From Styela clava (taxonomy: Eukaryota), in NCBI RefSeq assembly GCF_964204865.1, contig NC_135255.1:13702001-13766000 (forward strand): a stretch of DNA of 64,000 bases, written 5' to 3'. The notes under the pieces were generated by a model that was not told where the DNA came from, searched no databases, and saw only the letters and a program-made list of their open reading frames with translations. Numbering within the stretch: the stretch's first letter is position 1; the number at the start of each line of letters is the position of its first letter. Position numbers and translations under genes: made by a program. Shown here piece after piece: positions 1,105 through 44,971 of the stretch.

Positions 1105-1722
1105 GCTCGATAACGCTAGCATTTTTATATTTTATAGGTGGGAAAGTGACGTAATAAATTTAGTATGATTTTGTAATTGAAACAGTCCACTATTTCCCGA
1201 ACCCGGCTTTATTCAAAAACCAGTTGTTTTGCAAAAAACTGACTTTTTCATTTTCAATTGCTAAAACAAAAGGACAATGCGATCGAATATTATGAATTAT
1301 GATGTAATTGACAGCATATCAGATGAAGATCTATTTGATATTTATCGAAGGAGGCGTTGGTTATGTGCAAATGTTGTCTTATACTTAATTACCCCCTAAA
1401 GACCCATATTGTTGCCATGGAACGGGATGGTGACGTCAAAGCTCCCTGTGCAAATCAAAATTGTGCAATAAACTTTGAATGAACTTATGCTTTAAGTGTT
1501 TTGGCTCTCGATACCGATAGATGAAGAGAGAAAGAGAGATAACAACTTCCGACTGCACCGTGACAGGCAAGAATGAAATTTTATGATTGTTCAATGATTA
1601 ACTTTAACGTTATATGATTTTGATAGAATTTAAAGGGCACGAGGCAGCTCAAAATGCACATTTCGCACCTGGCGTTTGACGAATACACAGTTTTAGTTGC
1701 TAAGCTATCCCAACCTTGAGTA

Positions 1723-4700
1723 ATGCAGTCTAGCGTTGTCTACAGTCTGACAATATGTGCTATTCTACTAACAGCGATTTTAATAACCATCATCGTCGTG
1801 CTGGTGCCTGAATCGGATACACGTATGTTATTTGTATTTTTATTATAATGTAAACATTTGATGTGTCGTGAGTGTTAGCGCTCGCTTTTAAATGTAGTAA
1901 TATGCAAGCCCTTACCGGCGTGGTATTCGAAATCTCGAATACATTTATATTTTTGAGATTTGCTCACATATTTGAAGAATTATCTCAGATACTTCCGAAC
2001 GATAATTCCACGAAAAGTAGCGTGCGATTTTCTTCTGTCATACTGTACCGCCAATTGTTCTAGTTAGTTATAAACTGACTTTATTTTAGTTGCGGCTCCT
2101 CCGTCATGCTCTGCTTATCCTTGCGACGCAACGTGTGACATGAAGGTATCGCCATGCAATGGTCTCGTATTTGAAGAAAACTTTGATACATTCGACTTGC
2201 AAAGATGGCAACACGAAATCACAATGTCTGGAGGAGGAAACTGGGAATTTCAATTTTACACCAACAATAGGACAAACAGTTACGTCCGTGACAACACGCT
2301 CTTCATCAAACCGGTAAAATTTTCAAACAACGACCATACTTGTCGTATTTTGAATAGATTTCGTAACGGTTCGCTGTAATTCAGTCGTAACGTAGAAAAC
2401 AAATGTATAAATCGAACTGAACATCCATTGTCATAGTAATTTAGGGCGAAAGTATTACATTCATAAGACTGCTCTTTATTTTTTATTTACTTTGAAGTTT
2501 TAAATATTTTTCAATTCTGACATTGTTCTAATATTCACTACTATTGTTTTTACAAATTCATTCGACTCATTTTTTTATTATATTTTCGATTCTCTGTAGA
2601 TTTAGGTTCTATAGATATAGACAGATCGTAGACACTATTGCAACCTTCAATACAAACAAAAATGTTTAGACACTGACCGCAGATCACTACGGAGAATCGT
2701 TTTTGTCGTCTGGCGTTCTTGATCTATGGGGAGGAAGTCCTGCCGATTTCTGCACTGGAAATGCATTTTGGGGTTGTCAACGTACCGGAACTCCAGATAA
2801 CTACATCAACCCTGTACAATCAGCCAGGTAAAATATAGAATACATTTTTCAAATTCTGATTGGACGATACATGATCCGCGACGACGTCTAACCCTCTGAT
2901 GTCACGTATTTTGATGATTACTAGTGATAGCATGGGGTGTGAAATTCAATAAAGCAACCTCGTTTTTTGTTCGCTATCTACCCCATGGGGTGGGATAAAT
3001 TTCGCATGTGCCATATTTGACCCTCCATGCATTCACGGAAGAACGTCACTATAGCTTTTTTTAGGAAGCAATTACAGGCAAAACGAGTATAAAGTATGAA
3101 AATAAACAATTATGACTTTTAGTAACCACTTTTGTATATTTTGTCTAGCCTGAGATGTCCAAATCAGATTCAAATTGTTTGAAATTATATTTTCAGCAAT
3201 ATGTTGATCGAAAATAATCTAAAATTAGCAAATCTGAACAATTTGAATATATATTAGAAATTAAAAAGAATTTATTCAAGTGAATGCTATCGATGAAATT
3301 CCCCCAAAACAGTTTTGAGATTGTCTCATGCAAAGATATACACCACATTTTGCACAGTTCATGTTGCTTTTCATCGGACATCCCCTCTTTCTGCAATGGA
3401 TTCTATCACCAATGCCCTTCTTCATCGAAACGCGCATCCATTGGTGGAAGAATACTACTTGCAGCTTTTTTTGGTGTTGATGGGAGATCACTATCAATAC
3501 TTGGTCGACCACGGCAAAGTCCTAACTTGGCACTATGTACTGACATGTAGAGATTTCAGTGCGGAAATCTTTTATTGGAAGCGGATTACAAGAGTTGTAC
3601 TCTATTGTAAAAAAAGCCATGAATTGACAATAATTAATAGGTACCGAGATCTAAATCTAAAAACAGTGTTTCTTCACGCCTATGCACTTATTTCAGTATT
3701 CAAGTACATTTTAATTTGCGTTCAAACTATCATGTCATAACCAAAATGACTTAATAATATTAAAAAACTAACAACAACCAACTACTAAACCTTGGTTTAA
3801 CCTCGCAGGTGACAATTTAGCAGCTAGTCTACTGGCTTAGAAGTCAAATGGGGTTTAAAAATTTTACTTATCAAAATGTCGAAACTAATTGCCAAGGGCT
3901 ACAGGAAACAACCCAGATTTTTTTGATGGCTGGATTTGAGAATAACCGAGTAATTAAATACTAATATCTAAATAAATACTTATATAAACGGTATTCCGAA
4001 CTAAAAATACTCAATTACTGAACATATGAAAACCTTCACGCCAGTGAATCAAGAAAACACAGCCTGAGCACTTAAAATTTTATTCCCCCAAATGCATGAT
4101 GTGCCAAATTTGTCACACGCATTACCACCTAAATATTTCGAAATGCTGAAGAAATAGTTAAAAACTGCTAAGCTAGGCCTCTTCCTTGCTAATACCCCCA
4201 CTATTACGAATTATCTCCTATTATCTCCTCCGTTTATTGCACAATAGAGAGAATGCGTTCCAGATGCAAAGAATCTACGTTACTCAATAGCATAACCAAG
4301 TGGACCAATATAAAAAACAACACGTGACCCAAAAGAGATGTTTTGAATTTGACCCGCCATGCATTAAAGCGCTAATAATATGCGGGAGTATTGACACGGA
4401 ATAATAGCGTGTTAAATTAGTCAAATTCATTTGTTCTCATATATGGGCGCGATTGATATGTGCATTTTTTTACTCAAAATGTCATTTTACTTGCAATCGC
4501 ACGAATCTTATATATTCAGTAGCGTAATAGACATTTCATATTCAGAATACGTTCTGTGAATTCATTTGCGATCCAATACGGACGAATTGAAGTTGTGGCT
4601 AAGATGCCTAGTGGGGACTGGTTGTGGCCTGCGATATGGATGTTACCCAGGTGAGAATTTAAAACATTTATATATGTTATTTTAACACTTGAGGAGAGTG

Positions 4701-7455
4701 CTCGTGTTTGAACTTTGAACTTTTTGAAAGTCTTTATATCTACTTCGACAACCATTACAAAATCGATGGTCATATGAGCATGCTTGAGACGTATGCCTGT
4801 AGACGCTCAATGCGAGACTGAGATGGGTTTTAAAATATGACCCAAGTATCAACGTCACACTGGCAGATATTAGAAATCTTGAATTTGTCACCAAAGGTGC
4901 ATCAACTTTGGATTTGGAGCTGGAGCAGTAATGGCTCAGGATTTGGTGCTGTAGTAATTTTTTTCCCCCACTTCACAGTCTCGATGGAAAATATGGAGGT
5001 TAAACTATGAATATATATAATTGTATATCCTCAATTTTTGAGGACTACTGGCATGATAAGTAGAAAATCAAAATTCACACTTCAATTTGAAATGAAATTT
5101 TCCAATTGACGTTGGCCCTATATATTCGCGTAGTTATTGACTGTTTTTCATAAAGTTCAACCTTGTATGAATAATGCAATTACCTAACCACTCACGTTTT
5201 CATTGCCAAAAGTCAATAGGCATGCAATTCAACGTTGAAATGTTTTATCTATATCCACACTAATCTAAGTCTAAATAAATAAATACAAGAGAGTTATGAA
5301 TACATAAAAACAAATACCCTCTATATCGGTGCATAAATTGCGGACCATAATTAAAAAACATTCTAGAACTCAAGAAAGGTTTTCTAAATAGAAATATAGT
5401 AAAGTAACACACAATATCATTATGTAATTTTAATAAACCCTATAACGAGTTAACCAAATTAAAAATGAGGCCTGTTGCTTTGGAACGACCTGATGTCAAA
5501 TTTGAATTTACTTTAACAGAGACAATAGGTACGGAGGATGGCCAGCATCTGGAGAGATAGACATTATAGAATCAAGAGGTGAGTGAGTCCAAGCTTTTAC
5601 GTTATAATCCCAAATACGTTTTTCAATTTATTCGATTGCCATCTCACTATTTTGATATTATTGTTCGTTAATATTTAGTCATTCAAACAGGGGTTGCATT
5701 TTCTCTTACTTGGAAATACACGTCACATGATAATCCGAATGAAAGATACATATCATGAGGTACATAACGGGCGTTCATTTCACACTTATGTTACACTAAT
5801 GATTCTAATTTTGTCATCATTCTTTGTTTTTTAGGAAATATAAATCTCACAGATGCTGAAGGCGTTTCTAAAGGTCGTGACAATATGGGTATGACTCTAC
5901 ATTGGGGACCTTACTTTCCACTGAACGGATATCCAAAGACAACAATCGAAAGGTCTGTCATAAGCAGGAATATAAATTTTCGATAATGATTCGGTTTCTG
6001 TGGGACTAACTACTCATCCTTCTAAACGAAACGTTACAGAAATATATTTTAGCGTGCAGCAAGACTCTTGAATCACTTAGAATAAATTTTCGATTTATCG
6101 TTCTTTATTAGACGAAATCCTAATCTATAGACACACAGTTTAAGCATTCCACATTAGCTTCTTTCTTCTTTTCGTACTCAATGGCGTCCAATAATTTAAT
6201 TAATGTTCGAAATTCGAATCTGGTTGCGTTATAAATTTGCACCTAAATTATACATCAAAGAGCTTACAGAGTTTAATTGAATCTTCTCATCTTCGTGATA
6301 TTTTATTCCAAGTTTTCTTAACGTTATGTAAAGACGAGCAAAATTAAAAAATATAGAGAAAATATGAGCTGAATCATTAATTCCATTTCATTTATATACT
6401 ACAATAATATATATCTGGCACAGTCATCCGGCTTCGGGAACGTACGCATCGGCCTTTCACACATGGGTTGTTGATTGGACAGCAGAATATATAGATTTGT
6501 TTGTGGATGGTAAATTGCTGCGAAGAGTTGATCCGGGACCTGGAGGATTTTTCGATTATGGTGAATTTGAAAAAGAAGCACCGGGTATCGATAATCCATG
6601 GGCGAATTCTAACAACAAAATGACACCATTTGATCAAGAAGTAAGTTTTGGAAGTAATTTAACATGATAATAAAACATTCAGTTATTGCTCGTTTGTTTA
6701 GATTGTTTAATTATGGTTTATTCAGTATTTTCAACAATTATTTCTAGTTCTATATTCTCATAAATGTGGCTGTCGGCGGCACCAATGGATTTTTCCCAGA
6801 TTCTTGGATAAATGCACCTCGCGAAAAGCCATGGAAAAATGATTCACCAACGGCAATGAAAGATTTTTGGTTGAAAAAAGACGAATGGTGAGTAATTAAG
6901 TCATTCCCAATAATACCAAAATGTTGAAGAGCCTCAATGAATGTAATTTTCCTACCCGGAAACAATGAAGCGTGGGAGTATTCAGTTGTTAGTTATTAAT
7001 TAATAAAAAAAAACAGAGATGTAGAAAAGTTAGAAAGAAGTGAGTTAAATAGATATGAAACAGCGATAGTTCGCGGGACCAATTCCTCTACGCGAATGTC
7101 ATCGAAAAAGTCAGAGACAATTGAGATAAAAAAGAAATTTTTCGGAATCTATCTTTAGGTCTCAAATGCACAATATTTTTTCTGGTTTCCCGTATAGTGA
7201 ATATCGAGAATTCCAATATTTTTGGCTCATCGTGATCGTGACGAGTATATATATAAGTGTAGTAATTGTCAAAAGCTTGATGTTTAGTAAAAACTAAAAA
7301 AAAAATTAATTTGTCTATTAAAGTTAAATCAAAATGTATCGCCCCTATTAAATTTGTTTTTCTTTTACTATAGGTATCCATCATGGCAGCCAGACGTTGA
7401 CAATGGTGAGAACGCTGCTATGCAAGTCAGAAGTATTAAAGTTTGGGCTAAATAA
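1723..7455 (+). CDS. GH16 endo-beta-1,3-glucanase / beta-1,3-glucan-binding protein (LGBP/GNBP-like), 9 coding exons: 1723-1822, 2090-2313, 2670-2827, 4546-4650, 5520-5578, 5835-5952, 6424-6640, 6748-6887, 7374-7455
   Basis: Phase-consistent GT-AG exons give FEENFDTFDLQRWQHEITMSGGGNWEFQFY, YGRIEVVAKMPSGDWLWPAIWMLP, GGWPASGEIDIIESRG (intact ExDxxE catalytic motif), FHTWVVDW, PFDQEFYILINVAVGG and the end MQVRSIKVWAK*. Exon 1 encodes a hydrophobic N-terminus, MQSSVVYSLTICAILLTAILITIIVVLVP. Confidence 0.93.
2890..4375 (-). mobile_element. Degenerate piggyBac (PGBD-like) transposon remnant in GH16 intron 3; ends approximate
   Basis: Minus-strand fragments IVNSWLF, RGRPS...PPMDARFDEEGHW, then after a frameshift the C-terminal Cys-rich domain RIHCRKRGCPMKSNMNCAKCGVYLCMRQSQNCF (in ORF 3276-3512). 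Stops and frameshifts throughout. Terminal-like motif tttgacccgccatgcattaaagc near 4348-4370. Confidence 0.75.
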
Positions 7456-8196
7456 ATATGAAGTCGCTCCACCAGATAATTCATTTGTAAGTAATAATTG
7501 ATGTAAATGTCAACAACAACACACTAGTCGGGGATCGAAGACTACGCTGTTTCGGACGTCTCAACTTCATTTCACTGTAATCTTGGAAATCAACAAATGT
7601 TGTTGTAAATTACCTCAGAAACTTTTTCCCGATTATACATATTTACAAATGTATATAAATGGTAATAAATTATAAGTAAATACAGCATTCAATTTTTTTT
7701 CATATTTTTGTTGTTAAAAGTTTCCAGTGCAGCATTACAATTAGTCTTAATGATTTCTGGATATTTGATATCTGGATTTCTGATATCCAATAAAAGAATC
7801 AGTCAACTAGAAAACTTGAGAAGTTGTATTAGACACTGAAGCGAAAGGTACATAAAATGTCTATTTTAGAACCGTTGAAAATGTATGTACGGAGACTCGG
7901 GGAGTGCATTCTTATTCGTAAACCTTGTGTTGGGCTTCCATGATTCGTTAAGGCGGAAGTATATATATCATCATTCTATGAACAGTGTCAGTCAATAATC
8001 CTCATTTAGTCTATAATCAACCATGATGAAATAAATCAAACAATATTTAGTGGATAATTTCGATTAATAATTGACAGAAATTATGCAACTTATCCGTAAT
8101 GTTTCATTACACATAGCGATAAAAATTAAAACATGATGAGTACGTGATAGGAAGACGATATTTTAGTGTGGAGTTCAACGATAATAGAAGCGAAGA

Positions 8197-11100
8197 ATGA
8201 AGTCAGTCGTGGGATATAGCTTAATATTGAGCAGCATTGTGATTGCAGGAGTTGTTTCGTTGCTGCTTGTATTGTTGATGCCTTCATCTATTCCACGTAT
8301 GTTATTTTGTATGGTAATTTTTTTGAATATTTGTGAAATAATGTTCGATACATATTTCGGTGGGGAAAGTCACGTAGGCTATTTATGACAAGTCATATCA
8401 TTCGTTTTATCGGAAGCATATATATATTTTCTACAATAAGTCAAAGAAGAAATTTAAACCATGCCAACCCCAAATTTAGATGAATGTGGTTGGCGATAAT
8501 CACCTGAAGCTCTCTTCATTGGCATCGCCAGCAATAGAATGAAAATAGCATTGAAGGTACACTGGAAGTAACCGTACACAAAAATTAATATTTTGGAATA
8601 TTTATTTTTAAATGGGAAATTCACAAGCTGGAAACCCAATTTTTTCGATAATTTCCAACATTCCGAGAAATAGTTTAGAGGTTCAGTCTGAGCATCATAA
8701 TGAAAGGTCTTAAAATCAAGAATAGCCCACGAGAGTGGCAATGTTATCTGCTTAAGTCATTGCTTACGCCGAATTGCCTTCGCTTGCTTTTAGAACAACG
8801 TCGAACATGTGAGCCGAAATATTTTGATCAAGATCGTATGGTTTGTGTATGTAACTCAACATATTGCGATACACTCGATCCGCTTCCAGATTCATATCCT
8901 GAAGGATATATAATTATTTATACATCGAGTCAGAGTGGACTTCGTTTCAACGAGACATCGAATCAATTTCGCTCTCTATCGCAAAGTGATGTAGGTAAGG
9001 AATTAAATATTATTTGAATTGTTCATTTCCTAACATAGTCTATATATATGAGAGATGCACACAAATGTGGACACAAGGTCAAATGACTTAACCAGGGATG
9101 TGCAACAAGCGACCCGCGGGCCACAACTGACCCGACAGGCCCTTTAGTGTAGCCCGTATGAACACCTAAATTTTTTCTCATCTAGCATAAAATCGTAATC
9201 CGACAGTTTATGTTAAGAACTGTTATTAACAAGCTATGCGAAAACTTGAAATTTCAATTGTTTCGCTAAAATGTTAAATAACTAAAATTTTGCATTGTGA
9301 GAATATTTCAATTCATTCAACAAGACCCCGAACAACAACAATTAATCAAGTGCTCTTTTCCAGCCGCAGAACATTCGGCGTTTGTGTTTTATGAAGAGTT
9401 TTATCCTGGTTTTATCCCTTTTTGTGTAAATATGTATGTTATTGTTTCATTCAGCTACAATAACAGTCAATTCTGGTAAACGGTTGCAGACAATTAAAGG
9501 CTTCGGCGGTGCATTCACGGATGCTGCTGGAATAAATATTGCAAGCTTACCTCAACAGGCTCAAGAGAATTTATTGAGGTCATATTTTTCACCAGAGGGT
9601 AAGTTTATTGATATTTATGTACACCATAGGCTACGATCCTTTTGTGTGGTTAGAATTCAAAAGCTCGCAAACAGTATATGTATATAAATCATTTTGAACG
9701 GTTTAAAAAACGTGTATTGCTTGTTGATTTCAATTATAAATGTCAGTTTTCATAATTTTATGTATTATCTCTTGGTATTATAACATTTCTGTAACAAGGT
9801 CACTTCAACTTTTCCAGGTATCGAATATAACATGGGTCGAATTCCTATAGCAAGTTGTGATTTTTCAACTCGAGGATACACGTACAATGATTTCGAGAAT
9901 GATTTCGCCCTAACAAATTTTTCGTTAGCAAGTGAAGATTTTGTTTACAAAGTAATTTCATTTAAATAAGTTGATGTTAAATTTATAATCGACTGCTGTT
10001 GAAAATCTTTCGTTTCTTTACATCTTCGAAGATACCATACATAAAGAAGGCCGTGGCAATGAATAAAAGAAAGATGTCTTTTTATGCCAGCCCTTGGACA
10101 GCACCCGCTTGGATGAAAACAAACAATGACCTTATCGGAAAGGGAAGTTTGAAAGGGGAACCAGGTGGACCATACTATCACACTTGGGCTCTGTATTTTG
10201 CAAGGTATTGGGACCTCCTGAAGTATGCGCACCGAGATGGCGCACAACCTGAACTCAGGTTGTGTACCAGGTTAGGGTTCAGGTTGTGCGACATTTTAGT
10301 GCGCATACTTCAGGAGTACCAGGTATTGTTCATTTTAGTCAGTCGAGAATGGGGATAAGCTTACACTTCTTTCAAACTAATAGATCCTATTTATGAAAAA
10401 CTAACATTTCGATCCACGTGTTTATTATTATATTTCAAGTGTACAGTAATTGAAATCGCTACAATAACTTCTTTCTGTAATTATGTAATAGATTCATCGA
10501 ACACGTTCTGTCTTGATTTTATGTATTATATAGATTTATAGAAGAATATACAAAGAACGGTGTAGACATCTGGGGATTAACAGCGCAAAATGAACCAAGT
10601 GCTGGGAATATTCAGAATTTTCCATTTCAGTGCATGGGATTCAGTGATATTCAGCAGAGAGACTTCATAAAACTAGATTTGGTAATAAATTAGTTCGTAT
10701 TCTTTTGTATACTGTTAATAAAACTATAAAAGAAAATACTGACATACAATTTCTCCCATTTTATTGAGTAGGGTCCAACACTAGAAAACCGAGGTCACGG
10801 CGACGTAACACTGATGATAATGGATGATCAAAGATTGTTGTTACCGGAATGGCCAAAGGTTGTCCTGAATGATTCAGTCGTGAACGACTATGTTGACGGA
10901 ATAGCAATTCATTGGTAAACTTAGTTTATAAATATCTGTATTTAATAAATACAGTTTTATTTGAATTAAAAGAATTCTATCTTGATCGACCGATTTTCGG
11001 AAGAATAGACCTCGCAAACAATTTTTCGCGTTGTGGAAGCCACTTTATCTTGCGTGTTATAGGCAAGCTTGACTTATTTCGAAGCACGTGTTACTAATTA

Positions 11101-12494
11101 CTAGTGACTTCACATTAGTTGTAGCTTGCAACTCTTTTAGTGATATGTTTTTCACTTATAATTCTTTGGAACTTCTTTCGAGAAACTAGTATAGCATATA
11201 GCAGTATGTATATATATAATCATTCCAACAATATAAAATTCATTTGTCACGACACCACTTTACGTTTAATTAATAAATGGCAGTGAAATTTTCCTTTTTT
11301 TTCATCCCCAGGTATATGGATTTCATGGTGCCACCACAACGACTAACGGAAACCCATGAATTGTTTCCTGATAAATTTATGCTTGCATCGGAGGCATGTG
11401 CAGGGGCAAATCCTTTAGCAAATAAAGGAGTGGTGATGGGCAGTTGGGAACGTGGCGAACGCTACAGTGACGATATTATTGAGGCAAGTTCATATTTCTA
11501 TTATTACTTATCGATCTTTAGATCGGTAAGTATGTTGATAGGTATTTGTCTGTTAGATGCACGCGATATCTCAAGAAGGCGTGGTTGAATCTGCTCCAAA
11601 TTTTGCATGTGCAATCATCATATCCCGGACCAGAAGCCTATGTCGTATATATATTAGCGAGTTATTACTTAATTAGGGATGGGACACGTGGTGTCACTAT
11701 AGAGTCATGAATCGAAACCGCAGTTTCGATCGATAAGTCTTCGGTCTCCGACCGATATTCTCGTTTATATTTTGAAAAGATTTCTGACTCTATAATAATT
11801 TTAAGTGTGAATTTGCAATCAGAATCAAGGTTTATATATGTGGAGCGCCAAATAAAGTATGTGGGAATGAGGACATCGCAAAACAATATTACAAATTTAC
11901 AGGATATAACAAACTACGTGAGTGGTTGGGTGGACTGGAACATTGCTCTTGATATGAGAGGGGGACCAAACTGGGTGAGAAACTTCGTTGATTCTCCAAT
12001 CATCGTCAACAAAGAATCCTACGAGTTTTACAAACAGCCCATGTTTTATCACATGGGTCATTTCAGGTTGTATATATATATATATTTATTTTCGTTGTAA
12101 TTTATATTCCAATATTCAACATGAAACTTGGCGAAAATTAGTCGAACTATACGCTATATATGAATAATATAACAACAAATCCTATGCAATTGAAACATTT
12201 TCCCCATATGACATTTCTTGTGTATTTTGAGTTGCGTCATAATTGATTATTTTTAATTTTAGCAAATTCGTCCCCGAAGGCTCAGTAAGGATTGAAAGCT
12301 TGGCGAATCAACTTCCATTTAATGTCAAACATGTTGCGTTTTTGAATCCAAATACTAACCAAATATCGTTAGTCGTTTTAAACAAGTCAGAGAACGATAT
12401 CATCATTACAGTTCGAGACTCGGCTTCTGGAGAAGTAGAAGACGTTTTGGAGAAAAGATCTATCAAAACATATGTTTGGTCACTTTATGTATGA
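8197..12494 (+). CDS. GBA1: Glucosylceramidase (glucocerebrosidase)-like GH30 hydrolase, 10 exons: 8197-8296, 8794-8994, 9455-9598, 9818-9951, 10032-10204, 10534-10681, 10772-10914, 11312-11483, 11903-12066, 12263-12494
   Basis: Motifs [54 protein letters not shown] (acid/base Glu), [13 protein letters not shown] (nucleophile Glu), [25 protein letters not shown] and [16 protein letters not shown]. Intron 8 has a GC donor. Orthology to GBA1 rather than a paralog is unproven. Confidence 0.93.
9093..9160 (+). mobile_element. Fragment of a hAT/Charlie-type MITE end in GBA intron 2
   Basis: cagggatgtgcaac...cgacccgcgggccaca...ggccc resembles the termini of the copies at 43981 and 45091-45355. Confidence 0.5.
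10211..10320. mobile_element. 110-bp palindromic MITE with an 8-bp TSD (aggtattg) that duplicates the GBA intron-5 donor
   Basis: Long imperfect inverted arms ctcctgaagtatgcgcac...cacaacctgaac and gttcaggttgtg...gtgcgcatacttcaggag. aggtattg occurs at 10203-10210 and 10321-10328. Internal ggttagggtt motif. Confidence 0.85.
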
Positions 12495-12627
12495 ATTCAA
12501 TAATAAAAAATACTTGGAAAGGTACATATTTACATCCAAACTGTATCTATTTAGTGTAAAATATTGTTTAGTCTACTCAGAAACGTTAAACAAGTATCAT
12601 TTCCTGGCTACGACAGATCGTTGTGAA

Positions 12628-12660
12628 CGGAGGGGATAGGATTTACATATTTATCTCGGT
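12628..12660 (-). repeat. SINE-like 3' end fragment; related copies at about 13000-13040 (+) and 16530-16630 (+)
   Basis: Shared motif tctccccc(g)-gataaat(a/g)tg(t)aaat(t)c in three places, one inverted. Confidence 0.5.
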
Positions 12661-15600
12661 CATCTTCATGCCCAGATTTCAACGCCAAAAAAGATTTGTA
12701 TCCTCGAGCATCGATTCGTAATATTAGGCAGTCAAGATGTTAAGACGACGATCAGCTGTCAATTAAAAGTTTAGTAGATGCTCAGGCCAGCCCTATCTCT
12801 TTTGAGTTGTTTTTCCCTCATTTTAAAACGATGTGTATAATAAATGCGACTTGTACGAGCTATACGCTGGGTTTGCTAATATAGGCGATATGGTTGGTAA
12901 CGTCATACACATATAAAATAGCGCCAATGCCATATGCATATACAGCCAATTAATTCTATGTATTTCTGGTAGCCTACAGTTGGTTATTCATCCAGGTTTA
13001 TCGCCTTTCATCTCCCCCGAGATAAATATGAAATTCCATTGGTGACATGGCAGGCTTATTCATTTTGGTAGGAGTACATAGGCTTGCTTGGTTAAAAGGA
13101 CTAACCGTACCGCTCCATCTTATTATTAGTAGTGTCGAAGCACAAAATCAGAACATACGGTATAGCATAAACAACCCAGTTTAACATGCTATAACGGTAC
13201 GTTACCTGGTGTTGCAGTATTCTGACATCGGACACGCGGGCATGGGACATCAGGCCACTGTCTGACTTTAGTAGACACCAATTAGGGTTAGTTCGGATAC
13301 CTATAATTTTTAATATCCAGATAACGGATATATCCGAGTATTCTGTATTTTAACTATCCGGCGAAACAGATAAGACAATGCGAAAAATCTAAAGGGGCAG
13401 GGGCGGGGGGAGGAAAATTATATTAAAATCGCCGATCGTTTTCTTCATCATGGCGTTGGTATTTAGGATGTGAAAATAATAGGTATTATGTCGGCAAAAT
13501 ATATTTCGGCGAATTATAGCCTAACTCTCTCTCGCAGTTCACATCAGATCATGCTGCCTGCATGGAGTTTATCATGGAGAACGAAGCTGGGAATACGGTA
13601 CTGGAATAACACGAACAGTCAAACGTCAAATGTAACGGATATTTGATGATGGATTCTATAAAAAAGACTAGTCTACTTATACAAAGCACATGAATTTTGA
13701 TTAAAACTAAAGTTAGAACGCCAGGGCGTGGAATGCTCTTGTCATATTTTACTTGGTTTGTTGTTGTTTACTTTTACGCTGCTTTTATTATTGTTGTTTA
13801 TCGTCCGGTACGGTAGACTATTAGTTGAGTGCATTTGTAATCAAATTAATTTTATCACATATTGCGCACCGCTTGTTTGTTTGTTGTGTTCTACAATTCA
13901 CGCTAGTCCCTTGTACAGATATAGTAGAAATTACACTCCATGTTGAAACTCCACATCCACAGTCAAGTATTTACGCCCGGATTATTTTTCGTGTCTCTCT
14001 TTTTTTTCCTTTAAATTTACTTCAATGTGTTGTTTGCTGTGTGGGGTAAGTGGGCACGTGCACCAGCACGTCTTAAATCTTTTTTAGATTTTGCCCACTT
14101 TCATGATTTTCCGTACATTGGTTTGTTTTGCCCTGTATTGCCTATTTGTTTTGTTGTAACGGAAAATCGAAATAAACACTTACACTTACTTACAAGTATT
14201 CCACTGGACATGTGCCACAAGGTCCTCGGAAAAGGTTTTTCCCCGGAACTGTGCGTAAAGTGTAAAAAAAAAACTCCTTATTATGTGATCATCTGAGACG
14301 AGACGTTAATACAAACTAAGGATTGAATCCGCAAATCCAATTTTCAAATGAAGATGAGGAGGTGAATATTGTAAGTATGTTTGGGTGTCTCGACTCTCGA
14401 GACAAACCGGTAAAATATATCGGAAAACACCATGAATATTGTTTTAGGAGTGCCTTGACAGATTTAAAAACTCATTTTTAGACGTGGTAAATCGCAAAAA
14501 TTCCGGAATTTTTAATCGGAAACATATTATATGATTTTATGGCCGAATTTTGGATTTTGCAAATGGCGTCGTGGTGACGTAATTTTTGGATGACGCAGCC
14601 AGGTCCAGCTGGGCCTGGGGGTTAGGATTGACATACTGGCATATGCAAAAATTGTTATGCTACGCCCACTAGAAGTACTTTATTAAGTATGAAACTACAC
14701 CAGACCCAGCGTCCAGCGATTCTAGGAATTTTAGTGGCAACATAGACCTGTCAGTCATAGATTTTACATAACGTTGTTCTGTTGTTATGCATTGTCTGTA
14801 TCAGTAGATAGAAGGCATTAACGGAGTGCAGAGGTAGGCTATGGCCTACATAAGAAATATAGGGGCATTTATTATTATTTGTTACAATATTCCATGCATG
14901 ACGAAATAAAATATCTGAATCTAGTACAATAACACATATTCAAGAAACACATTGTGGCAGTGAAACAAATGCAAAAATGGGATACTGTTATCAAATAAAA
15001 TAGACCTAAATTTTGATGATATACAGAAAGATGATTTTGTTCAATATATTTTATTGTGATGGAAGTTTTTTCCACAAACAATTTATTCTACATTATGGTC
15101 TGACGGTACTGAATACTGAAATATATGTGCCCCAAATAGATGTGGGGAAAGAAGTGAATTCTTTTAGACATTGCAAGACAAAATAGAAACTGGGATAAAC
15201 CGAAATTAAAAAAATGGCATTTTGAAATCAAAAATCTAAATGGACCTGAAAGATGATATTACTGGGATAATTGCGAAAGGAAAATAAAAAAATAATTGTT
15301 CTGAACTAAAAAAAGATGAAGAAAAAAAGAAATATTGTTACTGTATTGATGAATTCTTATAGGAAGGGAATGAATAGAACTACACATTTTCAGATTTTGG
15401 TATGAATGTGATGCAGTAACAGAGTAATGAGTATCTTATAGCCCTTTTAGTAAAGACTCAACGTTTCAACCCTAGGCCACAGTACTTATACCAGTATACA
15501 GCTTTCAGGCTTTGATGTTTCAGTGTTTGGTTGTGTAGAGACAATAATATCAAGTTGATTGAGTTTCGGTAATTCGGGCAAAACTAGTATTATTACCTGT

Positions 15601-35690: not shown

Positions 35691-38456
35691 ATGTCTTTTG
35701 CACTGCCATGTGCCAGTCCATCAAAGGATTTACCTGGATCAAATAGTATCAGAATGGCATTGGATTTTAGTGATGATGGATTCATGGATGACGATTCAGG
35801 TAATTTGCTATTTCCATATTAGTAGACCAGATTTATTGCAAATAACTCTGTATTCAGGTATTTCATAAAAAGCAATTCATTGATCTGTTTGGGAATTTTT
35901 TGTTAGTTAGGCCTAACGTTATTACCTACGGTACGGTATTCATGTCACAGCAGCTCAGTTCTGCTGTCCACTTTTCAATAATTGGCTATATGATATTACC
36001 TCATTGACTAACCCCACGCTTTTTTATTAGGTATGCAATTGTCTTTGACACCATCACCTGACTCAATGAAAAATAGCCGCTCAAGAATCAGTTCACCTTC
36101 CCCAGCAAAACGTTCTCTTTTCTCTCCTCCTAAATCTAAAGTTAGTCGTTGTGAAGGAACACCAATCAGCTCAACAACACATTCTCGAGTTTTACGAAGA
36201 ATGTTACACAATAATAATGAAGATGATTTGAGGAAAATTTGTGCTTTGAATGCCATGGAATCAGCCTCTGAAGATGAAGAATTTCATTCACCAGCTTTGA
36301 GAAAGCTTCCATTTTCAAGTTATTGCGATCGTAGAGATTCTGGAAATGTTTCATACGATGAAAATACACCAGCGAGTTCATCCAGCATTCGCACATCAAA
36401 TGTTCTAGAATTTAACTCTTGTAGTAGTGGTGATGATAACAGTGACAGCAGTTTCTCTTCTCCAACCAGACCCAGCAGCAAGCCGCTATGTATTCCATCA
36501 CCAAAACAATCACCAGCATCATCATCGGGCGTTTCTGGTTGCTCACCAGGTCGGTCACCTCCAGACACTCCACCACACACAAGAAAACTTCGAGAGCTCA
36601 CACTCTTTGATTCTCCTTCCACACCAAAAACTCTTTTACGCAAAATGCGTTCCCGAAAACCAGCTTTACCTAAACCAATAGAATTTTCTTATTCTGAAAA
36701 CTGTCCCACACCAGTTCCACCACCAAGTCCAACCAGTGCTTTCAAGTCGAGAAGTCGTCTTCGTATGTTGCGAATGGATGCCGCACATTCAACACCCTCA
36801 ATGCCAAGAACTTTTAGAATAAGCGCAGATGGAACAGACACAACAGATGAAGAATGTGAGATAATTCGGGGTTCAAAGAGCTTACCCAGGTTTAACAAGT
36901 TCAAAGAACCCACTACTCCATCTGTAAATGTGAACCCATTTACACCCGATAACAGACCAAAAAATTCAAAACGTTCAAGAACTGGAAAACAAAGGAAACA
37001 TTCTTTTTGTTTGGATGACATAGATGAGGAAGATGAAATGAGGCCTGCCAAGGTAAATAGAACATTTTTTCTGTATTTTATATTCATCATGAGTCTCCAG
37101 AGTTTAAATAGTTATGTCTAATTGTTGCTGGTACTTTTCCATTCCTAAATTGACTTTTTCTATTTTCAGAGAATTCATTTACGTGAAAACAACATCTCTC
37201 GTTACCAACAAGAATTTCACGAAATTGGAAAAATTGGAGATGGCGAGTTTGGTTCCGTTTTTAAATGTGTCAATCGTCTTGATGGGTGTGTTTACGCAGT
37301 AAAAAGATCAAAGAAACCTCTTGCTGGATCTGTTGACGAGTAAGTTCATCAATGATATTAAAACATCGTATTAGTTTATCTTTTGGTTTACTTTATTAAA
37401 CATTTGAATTAACTCGAGCAAATACCATACACTGAGATCTTTTAATTTTGCAATTGCTAACCTTGTGTTTTTTTTACTTGCAGAGCAAATGCTATTCGTG
37501 AAGTCTGCGCTCATGCTGTCCTTGGAAAACACAGACACGTTGTTCGTTATTATTCAGCTTGGGCAGAAAATGATCATATGCTCATTCAAAATGAATATTG
37601 TAATGGCGGAAGCCTGGCTGATGTAGCAGCAAAGAATCAACAAGAAGGCGAAAAATTCTCTGAAGAAGAAGCAAAAAATCTTTTGCTGCAAGTTTCTAAA
37701 GGACTTAAATATATACATTCACAAAATTTGGTTCATATGGACATTAAACCAGGAAATATCTTCATTTGTAATGAAAAGCAGAATATTTCACTGGACTCTC
37801 ATCAGAGTGAATTAGATAGCGAAGACGAAGAAGAAAAGGTGACAACAACCAAGGAATGCTCTGTTTATAAAATCGGAGATCTTGGTCATGTTACTTCAAT
37901 TGAAGACCCACAAGTTGAAGAAGGCGATTGTCGTTACCTGGCTAATGAAGTTCTCCAGGAAGAATATTCACATTTACAGAAAGCTGATGTCTTTGCACTT
38001 GGTGTTGCTGTTCATGAACTTGCTAGTGGAAGAACGCCTCCCAAAAATGGCAGTTCATGGCACAAAATTCGTAACCAAGGCCTCGAGACACTCACTCACT
38101 GCTCAGATGAGTTCAATAAACTTTTGCAAAGCATGGTTCACCCCATCGTTGCTCATAGACCAACCGCAGCAAGCCTCACACAACACCCTCTCCTATGCCC
38201 TGGTTCTTCAAAATCAAAAGACCAATTGAGAAAAGAGCTTAACCAAGAAAAATTCAAAAATGAAATACTCGCAAGAGAGTTGGAGGAAGCAAGACAAAGT
38301 CAGCAAGAATCACAATTTAACAAAACTCCATTTGGAGGCCGAAGGGGAATGTCAACTGGATTACGCAAAAATTTCAGCAGTATGCGAGGCGGAAAAACTA
38401 ATAGACTTTTAGGTAAAAAGACTTGTCGCAGTATGAGCATGACTTCAATTTATTAA
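35691..38456 (+). CDS. WEE1: Wee1-like protein kinase, 4 exons: 35691-35799, 36031-37052, 37170-37339, 37484-38456
   Basis: SP/TP-rich N-terminus with Wee-box-like [14 protein letters not shown] and VNVNPFTPD. Kinase domain has [53 protein letters not shown] and [13 protein letters not shown]-terminal coiled coil and RSMSMTSIY*. Confidence 0.97.
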
Positions 38457-42363: not shown

Positions 42364-44971
42364 ATGAAGGTGATTGTGGCTGGTTACCCCAAAACGGGAA
42401 CAAAATCTATGAACTGGGCTCTCACCAGATTGGGTTACAAAGTCTATGATTATCCCGAGAACGTGTACTTGCTGCAGAAGGAATACAAAAAGATATTTAC
42501 ACAAGGCTGGACGACGGAGGATTTCCGAAGAATGTACGAAAATGTTGACGCAGTCGTTGATATACCAGCGTTCTATTTTTGGGAAGAAATTCATAAAGCT
42601 TTTCCCGACGCAAAGGTAGGCCTGGCGATTCGATTTATTGAATGCAATTTTTTAAACTAATTTTTGAACTCCTGGAAATCAAAATTGGCAACTGACCTAT
42701 TCGATTCATACCTAAATTTCGAAATTAAAAACTGATAAATAGCTAGCAAACAACGAAAACGAGCTGATTCTCTGCACACCTGCATGGCTGAAAAGTGAAA
42801 ACCTGTCTAAGTGAACAGTGTCTGAGCGACTGCTAAATTTTCAGTCGTTGCGTCCTTGTCAACAGTGAATTAAGCAAGAGAGTAGATGCTCAGGTAAACG
42901 TTTATTGATAATTCGTCTGGCTAATTTTATTGTTCTTTGAAGCTGCGGCCTTTATCCAAATCGATTTTCCATTTAGTCAACGGCTGTGAAAGTCCGAACG
43001 TTGGCTTTGCATACCAAAATTAATCATTTTCCAAATGTATTTATGCTTTCAATACTTGTTTAGATAATCCTGACCCTGAGAGACAGCGAGGAAGAATGGT
43101 TTCAAAGCATGAAGAATCTCGTTGACGTTGGGGAATCTAATATTGCACTCAGAGCACTTGAGATTTTGTCTCCCACACAAAGAAAGACAATGAGAGATGT
43201 TACCAATTATATGGGCAAGTTTGATTCTTTATTATTAAGTTTTCATTGCATTATATTCAGAGATTCGCAGGTTTCAGTTGATATAATTGATTCCCAACTA
43301 TCATTAAAGAGAGTAATATTCACTATTCAAAAACATCTGTTGATGACCTACCAGGAGATAGTAATTCATTATATATTGCTTAACATAACGGGATCTAGCT
43401 GAAATCAACTACAGTTGAGCGAGTTTGTCAAAATACTCTTAAAGTTTTTTTTTATCATCAAACTATAGGAATAAATCCCCCCCCCCCATACCCATGCTTT
43501 TAATGACAAAGAAGACAATTCAAAATCAATCTGCAGTGAAAATGCACTATCAGTTTCATTCTTTATCGTAAAGGTCCTACAATAATGGGAATTCAGAATC
43601 AGTCAAGTTTGAGACGAAAAGCTCATTTAAATGGATCCATGTTGAAATTAAAGTACCGGAACCATAATTCATCCGTACTTCAGGTTGGTGCTATATAATT
43701 ATTTTGTTTATAGCACAATTTCTTACAATAATAATTCTCGTTTTCCCGTGCCCTTTTTGTATTGACATTTGCTGCAAATTTATTTCATATTTTACATTGG
43801 TATGATTTTGCTAAAAGTACATTCAAGACCAAATAACATTTATAGGACTTGGAATAGAGTAATTAAGTCATCATTTAATACGTACTCATTTTCTATACCT
43901 GTGTGGACTGGGGTATGTAATAAACTGGGCACGTCGATACTACTAAATGATCATTTCAGACCAAGTGAATCCGTCTAGTCTAGGGGTGGGCAAATTACGG
44001 CCAGCGGGCCAGATTCGGGTCGCCGAGGTGTTTCATCCGGCCCACTTGTGCCTGCTGAAATTACGTATTTATGTTTATTTAGGACCTTCAAAGACTTATT
44101 TTGTGTGGCCGCGAAGGCTGCAGCTCATTTCTTTCTTTCTGCCAGTTCATTAATTTCACTTTCATCCAATTATTCTGTCTATACTCACGACACTTGCTAA
44201 ATTTTCAATGCTATTCAATACATCTCCTGCGACATGTAACTATTTCATTACATCAGTGAAACCAACATGCAGGCAATTGTTTATTCATGTTAGTTACTTG
44301 CAAATAAACCGTTTTTCATGCATCTTGAGTTTTGAACGACCAGCCCAGTAACCAATATTATTATTTGTGAGTGGCCCACTTAGGAAGGTAATTGCCCACC
44401 CCCGATCTATGCCGGTACGTTTACCAGCCAATGTTGGAGCAAATTTGAATCATTGTTTCCTAATTTCAATCTAAATACCAAAATGCCACAAACGTATTTA
44501 TTTTTGACTTCTGAATTACAATGCATGTTTGTAAACTCAATTTTAGGGAATTATTTCGAATCAGGCATTAGGTATAATCTGTAAATGCCCCAATGTTATC
44601 TCCATGCCCTGACTGTTTGATTTTCAATGACAATGGTGTATCTGTCTGTATTTTAGAGAGCGCCGAAGGATAAACTACTAGTTTACAAGTGTTCCGAAGG
44701 CTGGGAGCCTCTGTGTAAATTTCTTGGTGTTCCAGTTCCAAAAGAACCATTCCCACACAAAAATAAAGCAGGGAATATTGTCGGCGAGGTTTTGGAAACA
44801 AACGAAATTTTTTTGCGCATGCAAAGGGAATTACTTTTTTCTTCAATAGCTATAATCGCTGGATCCATAACATTAGGGTATTATACATACAAACTTGGGC
44901 CTCTTGGTGTCTGTAAAGGGTTGGTAGAATCAGTCACTGATATGTATGAAAAATTTCCAACATTTTGGTGA
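42364..44971 (+). CDS. P-loop sulfotransferase (Sulfotransfer_4-like) with a C-terminal hydrophobic anchor, 4 exons: 42364-42615, 43064-43214, 43574-43683, 44657-44971
   Basis: MKVIVAGYPKTGTKSM (PAPS-binding loop), DAVVDIPAFYFWEEIHKAFPDAKIILTLRDSEEEWFQS, APKDKLLVYKCSEGWEPLCKFLGVPVPKEPFPHKN, then LLFSSIAIIAGSITLGYYTY. Intron 2 has a GC donor. Confidence 0.9.
43981..44404. mobile_element. hAT/Charlie-type MITE in sulfotransferase intron 3
   Basis: Termini taggggtgggcaaatt and aattgcccaccccc, with cggcc.gcgggcc subterminal motifs. Confidence 0.7.

What the first reader, a model, noticed from the sequence alone, without database searches (positions are those of the whole stretch)
1723..12494. 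Possible animal laminarin-digestion module: GH16 endo-glucanase next to a GH30 beta-glucosidase
Seen: the genes are head-to-tail, 741 bp from stop to start, both catalytically intact (EIDIIE; NEP and ASEAC), with matching N-terminal targeting exons. Known: algal laminarin is a beta-1,3-glucan with beta-1,6 branches. Marine Bacteroidetes laminarin utilisation loci combine GH16 endo-glucanases with GH30 debranching enzymes, and glucocerebrosidases belong to GH30. Inference: in a phytoplankton filter feeder this GBA copy may be repurposed as a gut-surface exo-beta-glucosidase or debrancher working with the GH16. This would be convergent, since both genes are intron-rich animal-type genes rather than recent transfers.
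Basis: inference. Interest (0 to 1): 0.75.

Follow-up and report, generated by a model that had tools for sequence, protein, structure and literature searches.

The report
Membrane-anchored glucanase beside sea-squirt GBA
In the sea squirt Styela clava, a beta-1,3-glucanase gene and a glucocerebrosidase gene sit side by side and start with look-alike membrane-anchor exons, which probably records an exon duplication; nothing yet shows that they digest algal laminarin together.

Summary
Window 1723-7455 is a nine-exon GH16 gene and 8197-12494 a ten-exon GH30 (GBA) gene, both on the + strand and 741 bp apart, with EIDIIE, NEP and ASEAC intact. The exon translations equal the Styela clava database proteins P0279 (392 of 394 codons) and P0032 (530 of 530). 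Spliced RNA-like contigs confirm two GH16 junctions and eight of the nine GBA junctions.

Four results are new.
- The genome has a second GBA, intronless, with an ordinary signal peptide.
- Ascidians carry two GBA paralogues. The window copy is the anchored "type B", shared with Ciona and Clavelina. It is closer to human GBA than type A and keeps most of the hydrophobic aglycone pocket.
- The neighbouring GH16 is a Styela-lineage duplicate of a secreted CBM39-GH16 gene. Its 5' exons were replaced by a 100-nt, phase-1 anchor exon resembling GBA exon 1.
- Two RNA-like runs hold GH16 with little or no GBA.

My reading is that the adjacency records an exon-1 duplication or capture. A selected laminarin module remains possible but is untested. 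Tissue expression and synteny in other tunicates could not be checked. The scan had already noted the shared first exon on this same stretch (s1-819804).

The parts
1723..7455 (+). GH16 endo-beta-1,3-glucanase-type gene. Nine exons, 400 codons plus stop. It equals the Styela clava database protein P0279.
   Evidence: Model read. Splice sites and phases checked. 392 of 394 whole codons match P0279. Joints 6640>6748 and 6887>7374 appear in contigs of X1, X2 and X4.
1723..1822 (+). GH16 exon 1: 100 nt, phase 1. It encodes a 33-residue N-terminus with an uncharged run of 29 residues (a predicted signal anchor).
   Evidence: (Kyte-Doolittle mean 3.09).
2090..2313 (+). GH16 exon 2. It begins in phase 1 and is homologous to an exon of the C5 CBM39-GH16 paralogue that also begins in phase 1 and ends at the same K-P codon pair.
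2670..2827 (+). GH16 exon 3
4546..4650 (+). GH16 exon 4
   Evidence: (weak PF00722 match)
5520..5578 (+). GH16 exon 5, carrying the catalytic E-I-D-I-I-E motif (starts at 5554)
5835..5952 (+). GH16 exon 6
6424..6640 (+). GH16 exon 7
   Evidence: PF00722 at 23.2 bits. GH16 chains in the PDB. Contigs.
6748..6887 (+). GH16 exon 8
7374..7455 (+). GH16 exon 9, with stop codon at 7453-7455. Contigs run on to 7616-7669 (3' UTR).
7456..8196 (.). The 741-bp stretch between the GH16 stop and the GBA start. It holds the GH16 3' UTR. A TTTTAG acceptor-like site lies 30 nt before the GBA ATG; a like site lies 26 nt before the GH16 ATG.
   Evidence: The acceptor reading is inference.
8197..12494 (+). GH30 (GBA, glucosylceramidase-type) gene. 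Ten exons, 536 codons plus stop. It equals the Styela clava database protein P0032 and is the ascidian 'type B' paralogue.
   Evidence: 530 of 530 codons. Eight of the nine joints appear in an X1 contig.
8197..8296 (+). GBA exon 1: 100 nt, phase 1, a predicted signal anchor. Its splice to exon 2 is confirmed.
   Evidence: joint 8296>8794; Kyte-Doolittle mean 2.94
8794..8994 (+). GBA exon 2
9455..9598 (+). GBA exon 3
9818..9951 (+). GBA exon 4
10032..10204 (+). GBA exon 5
10534..10681 (+). GBA exon 6, with the acid/base Glu in N-E-P (QNEP starts at 10586)
10772..10914 (+). GBA exon 7
11312..11483 (+). GBA exon 8, with the nucleophile Glu in A-S-E-A-C (starts at 11385). It is followed by a GC..AG intron.
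   Evidence: (joint 11481>11901 with 3 shared letters, which fits 11483>11903)
11903..12066 (+). GBA exon 9
12263..12494 (+). GBA exon 10 (GH30 C-terminal beta-sandwich), with stop codon at 12492-12494
   Evidence: (PF17189)

Best explanation
These are two real, expressed Styela clava genes in tandem.

The upstream gene is a catalytically intact, metazoan-type GH16 beta-1,3-glucanase. It arose in the Styela lineage by duplication of a secreted CBM39-GH16 gene now on piece C5. It lost the exons for the signal peptide, the CBM39 module and the linker. In their place it has one 100-nt, phase-1 exon that encodes an uncleaved signal anchor.

The downstream gene is the ascidian 'type B' GBA (GH30). 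This is the intron-retaining, human-like paralogue, and its anchor exon of the same size and phase is shared with Ciona and Clavelina.

I infer that GH16 exon 1 is a diverged copy of GBA exon 1, and that the adjacency is the footprint of that local duplication or capture. I do not read it as an anciently selected digestive cluster.

Both products are predicted type II membrane proteins with their catalytic domains outside the cytosol. The GH16 most likely cleaves beta-1,3-glucan at a membrane surface. The GBA most likely still removes glucose from a hydrophobic aglycone such as glucosylceramide.

Shown here: gene structures, splicing, catalytic motifs, the paralogue history, and the second GBA. 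Inferred: the direction and mechanism of the exon duplication, the membrane topology, and the substrates.
For: Gene models and identity to P0279 and P0032.

Splicing.

GH16 history:
- The window GH16 is sister to S. clava P0284 (C5, with CBM39) with support 100/99. Ciona P0267 and Clavelina P0272 fall outside. The window copy has the longer branch, 0.40 against 0.17.
- No protein closer than P0284 (78% identity) was listed in a search of 5.8 billion clusters.
- P0279 lacks PF15886 (CBM39), which P0284 and P0267 carry.
- The C5 exon homologous to window exon 2 also starts in phase 1 and ends at the same codon pair.

Age of the GBA anchor: the type B proteins of Ciona (P0066) and Clavelina (P0070) have the same N-terminal hydrophobic segment. 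Of 117 Met-starting GBA hits, 4 have such a segment: the three ascidian type B proteins and one bird poly-Leu signal.

Similarity of the two first exons:
- 51 of 100 nt identical. None of 20,000 codon shuffles reached this (shuffle mean 32.0).
- 11 of 33 residues identical. 38 of 20,000 shuffles reached this.
- Nine other hydrophobic N-termini reached at most 9 of 33, even when every offset was tried.
- An identical 14-mer spans both donor sites and occurs nowhere else in the window. 0.09 matches were expected, and 2 of 100 shuffles gave two or more matches.

GBA conservatism: 563.5 bits against human GBA for the window copy, against 511-515 for the intronless copy. The alignments show the catalytic residues and most aglycone-side residues kept.
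Against: - The exon-1 similarity is modest, and much of it sits at second codon positions (24 of 33), where hydrophobic codons share a T. Third positions match at only 14 of 33. Convergence of two anchors is therefore not excluded.
- Upstream DNA shows no clear similarity beyond a short TTTTAG motif.
- Two of 100 shuffles gave two 14-mer matches somewhere in the window.
'Young adjacency' rests on the GH16 tree alone, and that tree contains few named tunicates.
- The A+B sister grouping of the GBA paralogues is weakly supported (85/49).
- Topology was judged from hydropathy only. No signal-peptide or membrane predictor was available.
Confidence: 0.55

Rival explanations
1. The anchored GH16 and the anchored GBA sit together on the gut epithelial surface. 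The GH16 cuts laminarin into oligosaccharides. The GBA paralogue, freed from lysosomal duty by the second GBA, removes beta-1,6 branches or terminal glucose.
For: - The two genes are adjacent, on the same strand, with the same kind of N-terminal anchor.
- A second GBA with an ordinary signal peptide exists.
- Both genes give spliced contigs in run X1.
- Passages of PMC12079659 report the sea-urchin beta-1,3-glucanase candidate gene (LOC373274) in larval pancreatic-like and midgut cells, and high laminarinase activity. P0239 is the S. purpuratus database protein named 'beta 1,3-glucanase'. I assume it is the product of that gene, but no call linked it to LOC373274.
- A table in PMC7560691 lists hepatopancreas as the main expression site of mollusc GH16 and GH30.
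- Passages of PMC6298971 describe flavobacterial laminarin loci that hold GH16 together with a GH30 exo-beta-1,6-glucanase.
Against: - Type B GBA is the more human-like copy and keeps most hydrophobic aglycone-site residues.
- It predates the neighbouring GH16.
- Runs X2 and X4 hold GH16 with no GBA or a trace of it, and X10 holds neither.
- The nearest solved beta-1,6-glucanase-type chain (5ngk) scores 148 bits, against 563 for human GBA.
- No tissue data were available.
Confidence: 0.15
2. Chance neighbours. The two genes lie side by side by accident, and their first exons are independent signal anchors that look alike only because hydrophobic segments use similar codons.
For: - Second codon positions carry most of the identity, and third positions match at 14 of 33.
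- Unrelated anchors reach 9 of 33 residues.
- No upstream similarity is visible.
Against: The two exons share the same length (100 nt) and the same phase. They share the M-x-S-x-V-x-Y-S-L start and an identical 14-mer across the donor. None of 20,000 codon shuffles reached the nucleotide identity. All of this occurs in two genes only 741 bp apart.
Confidence: 0.15
3. Immune rather than digestive. The anchored GH16 is a cell-surface beta-glucan sensor or hydrolase of haemocytes or epithelia, like the LGBP/GNBP relatives. The GBA next door is unrelated housekeeping.
For: - The database names for P0279 and its relatives are 'beta-1,3-glucan-binding protein-like'.
- The parent paralogue carries CBM39.
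- PMC13390645 (conclusion passage) considers protection from pathogens as a role for another tunicate glucanase.
Against: - The catalytic motif is intact.
- CBM39 has been lost.
- There are no expression data by tissue.
Confidence: 0.1

Closest known systems
Metazoan GH16 beta-1,3-glucanases and LGBP/GNBP proteins, for example the sea-urchin protein P0239 ('beta 1,3-glucanase') and S. clava P0284
   Same: Same family and clade. 57-78% identity to deuterostome members. Catalytic E-x-D-x-x-E kept. PMC12079659 (passages) reports a digestive role for the sea-urchin beta-1,3-glucanase gene LOC373274; I assume P0239 is its product, which no call checked.
   Different: It has no CBM39 and no ordinary signal peptide. 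Instead it has a single-exon signal anchor resembling that of the neighbouring GBA. It has a longer branch than its paralogue.
Human lysosomal acid glucosylceramidase (GBA1, GH30; PDB 1ogs, 6t13)
   Same: 563.5 bits over nearly the full length. Both catalytic Glu residues and most active-site residues are kept. Several exon lengths equal the human ones as I recall them (134, 173 and 164 nt); that is recall and was not checked with any tool here.
   Different: The N-terminus is a transmembrane-length hydrophobic segment rather than a short cleavable signal. The loop after the nucleophile differs. It is one of two ascidian paralogues.
Flavobacterial laminarin utilisation loci with GH16 plus a GH30 exo-beta-1,6-glucanase (PMC6298971, passages)
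   Same: A GH16 next to a GH30 on one strand, in an organism that eats phytoplankton.
   Different: The GH30 here is of the animal GBA type. The solved beta-1,6-glucanase-type chain 5ngk scores only 148 bits. There is no transporter or regulator. The genes are separately spliced and are not always found together in RNA-like runs.
Tunicate GH16 subfamily-3 glucanases proposed as horizontal transfers (Ciona KY21.Chr9.350; PMC13390645, section 11 read)
   Same: A tunicate beta-1,3-glucanase, expressed only in the stomach in Ciona and proposed to digest plankton glucans. S. clava has such a gene on C17.
   Different: The window gene belongs to the animal-wide clade, not to that bacterial-like subfamily.

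Membership tests
GH16 | Catalytic motif E-x-D-x-x-E | tested here: met
   E-I-D-I-I-E starts at 5554. The motif definition is recalled.
GH16 | Match to the family profile PF00722 | tested here: met
   Exon 7 scores 23.2 bits against a cut-off of 22, and exon 4 scores 13.4, among 7 exons given. P0279 carries PF00722 and PF26113 in the precomputed list.
Metazoan GH16 beta-1,3-glucanase / LGBP clade | Groups with animal members in a tree | tested here: met
   Sister to S. clava P0284 with support 100/99, inside a tunicate group at 100/99.
Metazoan GH16 beta-1,3-glucanase / LGBP clade | N-terminal CBM39 glucan-binding module (present in many members, not all) | tested here: not met
   PF15886 is absent from P0279 and present in P0284 and P0267.
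Metazoan GH16 beta-1,3-glucanase / LGBP clade | Hydrolysis of laminarin | not testable with these tools
   This needs a recombinant enzyme assay.
GH30 glucosylceramidase (GBA1 type) | GH30 TIM barrel plus C-terminal beta-sandwich | tested here: met
   PF02055 positions 1-344 are matched collinearly over 8 exons, and PF17189 in the last exon.
GH30 glucosylceramidase (GBA1 type) | Acid/base Glu (N-E-P) and nucleophile Glu (A-S-E-A-C) | tested here: met
   Both are aligned to the same residues of human GBA.
GH30 glucosylceramidase (GBA1 type) | Hydrophobic aglycone-side residues (human F128, Y244, F246, Y313, F316, F397, V398; this list is recalled) | tested here: met
   In the alignment all are kept, or conservatively changed (Y244 to F). 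The 345-348 loop differs. In type A several are changed.
GH30 glucosylceramidase (GBA1 type) | Soluble lysosomal protein with a cleaved signal peptide | tested here: inconclusive
   The N-terminal uncharged run is 33 residues with a Kyte-Doolittle mean of 2.94, which suggests an anchor. No cleavage or localisation predictor or experiment was available.
Laminarin utilisation locus (functional gene cluster) | A GH30 of the beta-1,6-glucanase kind | tested here: not met
   563.5 bits against human GBA, 148 bits against 5ngk.
Laminarin utilisation locus (functional gene cluster) | Co-expression of the members | tested here: inconclusive
   Both are in X1. GH16 alone is in X2, GH16 plus a depth-2.3 GBA contig is in X4, and neither is in X10. 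Contigs do not measure expression level, and the tissues are unknown.
Laminarin utilisation locus (functional gene cluster) | Conserved linkage across species | not testable with these tools
The GH16 tree suggests a young neighbour.

The most novel reading that the evidence does not exclude
A local duplication of the GBA anchor exon gave a beta-1,3-glucanase the same membrane address as an ancient, ascidian-wide, membrane-tethered GBA paralogue. An endo-glucanase and a beta-glucosidase would then sit side by side on the gut surface and turn laminarin into glucose. That would be an animal counterpart of the bacterial GH16+GH30 laminarin loci, built by exon shuffling.
Probability: 0.12. Interest if true: 0.7.

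Novelty: new variant of a known kind. Interest (0 to 1): 0.4.

Why it matters
Laminarin is a major carbon store of marine phytoplankton, so how filter feeders use it matters for carbon flow in the sea. If the two enzymes worked together on the gut surface, this would be a rare animal case of a locally assembled two-enzyme pathway.

Two points are new even without that. First, ascidians keep a membrane-tethered, human-like GBA alongside a second GBA that is intronless in Styela. My three literature searches for tunicate GBA turned up no paper on this. Second, one gene may have obtained its membrane anchor by copying the first exon of its neighbour. The anchored GBA may interest people who study how GBA reaches and works at membranes.

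Tried and rejected
Synteny in Ciona and Clavelina was planned through the look-up of encoding contigs. No other eukaryote genome source was on hand, and I judged a metagenome scan unlikely to hold styelid genomic contigs.

A genome-wide Pfam PF00722 scan found only the bacterial-type GH16 on C17 and missed the window gene. A scan with the protein P0279 was needed instead.

The large representative search with GH16 exon 7 gave 115 hits at E <= 0.001, most of them short fragments, and not the S. clava protein itself. It did supply P0123, which led to P0279.

A search for a family of such first exons found only the GBA site plus one chance-level hit, with controls giving 1-4. The protein scans of the genome did not link the two first exons at their thresholds.

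I considered an operon reading. GH16 contigs end at 7616-7669 and the GBA ATG is at 8197, and X2 and X4 hold GH16 without GBA. I rejected co-transcription as the main mode, but the 5' end of the GBA mRNA was not seen.

Literature: searches found no paper on tunicate GBA. One search listed 4 papers, which I judged unrelated from their titles and abstract openings. All 15 rows listed had zero occurrences of the enzyme name. PMC12212465, PMC9953650 and PMC7540406 were searched by term only and held nothing on these enzymes.

I ran no structure prediction, because both proteins are more than 50% identical to well-known folds.


Full report
What is there

The window is AT-rich (GC 0.28-0.40) and has no N. 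Reading 1600-12700 gives two + strand genes with consistent phases.

The first is a nine-exon gene at 1723-7455. It has 1203 coding nt, and all eight introns are GT..AG. The second is a ten-exon gene at 8197-12494. It has 1611 nt, with eight GT..AG introns and one GC..AG intron.

- For GBA I gave 9 of the 10 exons. Eight match PF02055 in order across profile positions 1-344, and the last matches PF17189.
- For GH16 I gave 7 of the 9 exons. Only two touch PF00722, and only exon 7 passes the cut-off (23.2 against 22 bits). Exon 7 also finds GH16 chains in the PDB (best E 8.3e-05).

Whose genome it is, and the database proteins

I confirmed this. A search with the single-exon GBA copy found elsewhere in the genome returned a 99%-identical S. 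clava protein (P0001). It also returned a second S. clava GBA, P0032.

Compared exon by exon, the window's GBA translation equals P0032 at 530 of 530 whole codons. The GH16 translation equals S. clava P0279 ('beta-1,3-glucan-binding protein-like', 400 aa) at 392 of 394. P0279 was reached by way of the representative search with exon 7, the sea-urchin hit P0123, and a word search with that protein's GH16 part.

Expression and splicing

The look-up of sequencing runs listed nine runs holding part or all of the stretch. Five were guessed to be RNA and none is on record as RNA. Names and tissues are coded. I laid X1, X2, X4 and X10 on 6420-12419. All four are stored as contigs, so expression levels cannot be ranked.

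- Spliced contigs carry GH16 joints 6640>6748 and 6887>7374 in X1, X2 and X4.
- In X1 only, contigs carry eight of the nine GBA joints. These include exon 1>exon 2 (8296>8794) and the GC-AG intron (listed as 11481>11901 with three shared letters, which fits 11483>11903). Joint 8994>9455 is not among the 15 rows shown; six more rows were not shown.
- X4 has one weak GBA contig (depth 2.3, last intron). X2 has none. X10 has neither gene.

Both genes are therefore transcribed and spliced as modelled, but the GH16 can be present without the GBA.

The X1 GH16 contig is 1413 nt long. That length fits a full coding sequence plus short UTRs. I did not see its 5' part, so this is an inference.

Other copies in the genome

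- GBA has exactly two loci. One is in the window, on piece C6. The other is on C3 in a single open frame of 450 codons without introns.
- In this assembly the signal-peptide part of the C3 copy is in another frame, shifted near a T run. The database protein P0001 reads straight through. This is either a one-base assembly or allele difference, or a very recent break.
- Metazoan-type GH16 has four loci: C6 (the window), C5, and two in tandem on C10. A bacterial-type GH16 lies on C17.
- No other GH16 lies next to a GH30.

The GBA is the old, conservative paralogue

Ciona and Clavelina each have two GBAs that pair up with the two Styela ones.
- Type A has a short signal-peptide-like N-terminus. 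Best 19-residue Kyte-Doolittle means are 1.2-1.7.
- Type B, the window copy's type, has an uncharged run of 25-33 residues, with means of 2.6-3.1.
- Of 117 Met-starting proteins among the 120 listed GBA hits, four have such a segment. They are the three ascidian type B proteins and one bird protein with a poly-Leu signal.

In a 36-row tree, type A (14 rows, nine of them unnamed) is a clade at 100/100 on a stem of 0.40. Type B is a clade at 97/95 on a stem of 0.16. The two join with weak support, 85/49.

Against human GBA the window copy scores 563.5 bits and the intronless copy 511-515. The residue list below is recalled from the GBA literature, and the residues were read off the two alignments.
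- Both copies keep the residues around the glucose.
- Type B also keeps, or conservatively changes, the hydrophobic aglycone-side residues: F128, Y244 to F, F246, Y313, F316, F397 and V398. It differs in the 345-348 loop.
- Type A changes several of these residues.

Several type B exon lengths (134, 173 and 164 nt) equal human GBA exon lengths as I recall them. This is recall and was not tested.

Type B thus looks like the direct, intron-retaining descendant of the chordate GBA, and type A looks like a faster-evolving, possibly retrocopied gene. That is the opposite of what a 'repurposed copy' would predict on sequence grounds. It does not exclude a new location or role for type B.

The GH16 is a young duplicate with a swapped 5' end

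In a 35-row tree the window GH16 is sister to S. clava P0284 (C5) at 100/99, with branches of 0.40 and 0.17. Ciona P0267 and Clavelina P0272 fall outside. A word search with P0279 listed nothing closer than P0284, at 78% identity.

P0284 and P0267 have a signal peptide, CBM39 (PF15886) and a Ser/Thr-rich linker. P0279 has none of these. The C5 exon homologous to window exon 2 also starts in phase 1 and ends at the same K-P codons. A phase-1 first exon could therefore replace the upstream exons without breaking the frame.

Are the two first exons related?

Both are 100 nt and phase 1.
- Without gaps they share 51 of 100 nt. None of 20,000 codon shuffles reached that (mean 32.0, sd 4.2).
- They share 11 of 33 residues. 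38 of 20,000 shuffles reached that.
- Against this, most of the identity is at second codon positions (24 of 33), and third positions match at 14 of 33.
- The last three exon bases and the first eleven intron bases are identical in the two genes. That 14-mer occurs only at these two places in the window. 0.09 matches were expected with up to one mismatch, and 2 of 100 shuffles gave two or more. By my reading, none of the other 15 donor sites of the two genes resembles it.
- A longer pattern found no further such exon in the genome beyond chance.

I take the two exons to be diverged copies. Because the GBA anchor is shared across ascidian orders and the GH16 is young, the GBA exon is the likely source. 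This direction is an inference.

What the pair most likely does

The GH16 is very likely an active beta-1,3-glucanase tethered to a membrane. Anchored GH16s recur in animals: 11 of 162 GH16-type proteins held here have such N-termini.

Digestive use of related enzymes is documented.
- PMC12079659 (passages read) places the sea-urchin beta-1,3-glucanase candidate gene LOC373274 in larval gut cell types and reports dominant laminarinase activity. I assume the database protein P0239 is that gene's product; no call linked the two.
- PMC13390645 (section 11 and passages) reports stomach-only expression of a different, bacterial-like Ciona GH16.
- PMC7560691 (table passage) lists hepatopancreas as the main expression site of mollusc GH16 and GH30.

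The GH30 here, however, is of the animal GBA type, scoring 148 bits to the solved chain 5ngk against 563 to human GBA.

The neighbours downstream hold no further glycosidase among the long ORFs. By eye these look like a kinase and a sulfotransferase-like gene, which I did not test.

Verdict

The functional module is neither shown nor refuted. The pre-condition, a second GBA, is met. The age mismatch, the conservative GBA active site and the uncoupled presence in RNA-like runs lean against a dedicated, co-evolved pair.

The best-supported account is structural. A Styela-lineage GH16 duplicate acquired a copy of its neighbour's anchor exon, and the adjacency records that event.

Limits
- No tissue labels were available.
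- No membrane or signal-peptide predictor was available.

Noticed in passing
L001 (G000:C3:7117828-7121865), minus strand, about 2490-2834 in locus coordinates: The second GBA (type A) is intronless. In this assembly its signal-peptide part is one frame off from the 450-codon body, shifted near a short T run. The database protein P0001 (99% identical) reads straight through. This is an assembly or allele difference, or a very recent break.
   Followed up: partly
L009 (G000:C17:12338675-12341791), minus strand: A bacterial-type GH16 gene with an intact G-E-I-D-I-C-E motif and few introns. It looks like the Styela counterpart of the Ciona subfamily-3 glucanases that PMC13390645 proposes as horizontally acquired and stomach-expressed.
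   Followed up: partly
window 10203-10328 and about 11500-11770: Stretches inside GBA introns 5 and 8 reach summed contig depths in the thousands to tens of thousands in all four runs, with many contigs running on into unlike sequence. They are dispersed repeats.
   Followed up: partly
window 11484-11902: GBA intron 8 is a GC..AG intron. A spliced contig in X1 confirms its use.
   Followed up: yes
window about 1690-1696 and 8160-8166: Both genes have a TTTTAG|T acceptor-like site, 26 and 30 nt before the ATG. These may be spliced-leader acceptors, copied along with the first exon. No read evidence for the 5' ends was seen.
   Followed up: no
G000:C10:9619147-9622697 and 9629222-9632613: Two tandem copies of a third, more divergent metazoan-type GH16 (like P0306, which has a signal peptide and an intact catalytic motif).
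   Followed up: no
window 36033-38456 and 42364-42660, + strand: Long ORFs that by eye look like a Wee1-type protein kinase and a sulfotransferase-like protein. Neither was scanned against any library.
   Followed up: no
P0022 and P0023: Two type A-like GBA proteins from one unnamed ENA contig of 890,704 bases. This suggests a tandem duplication of type A in some other tunicate.
   Followed up: no
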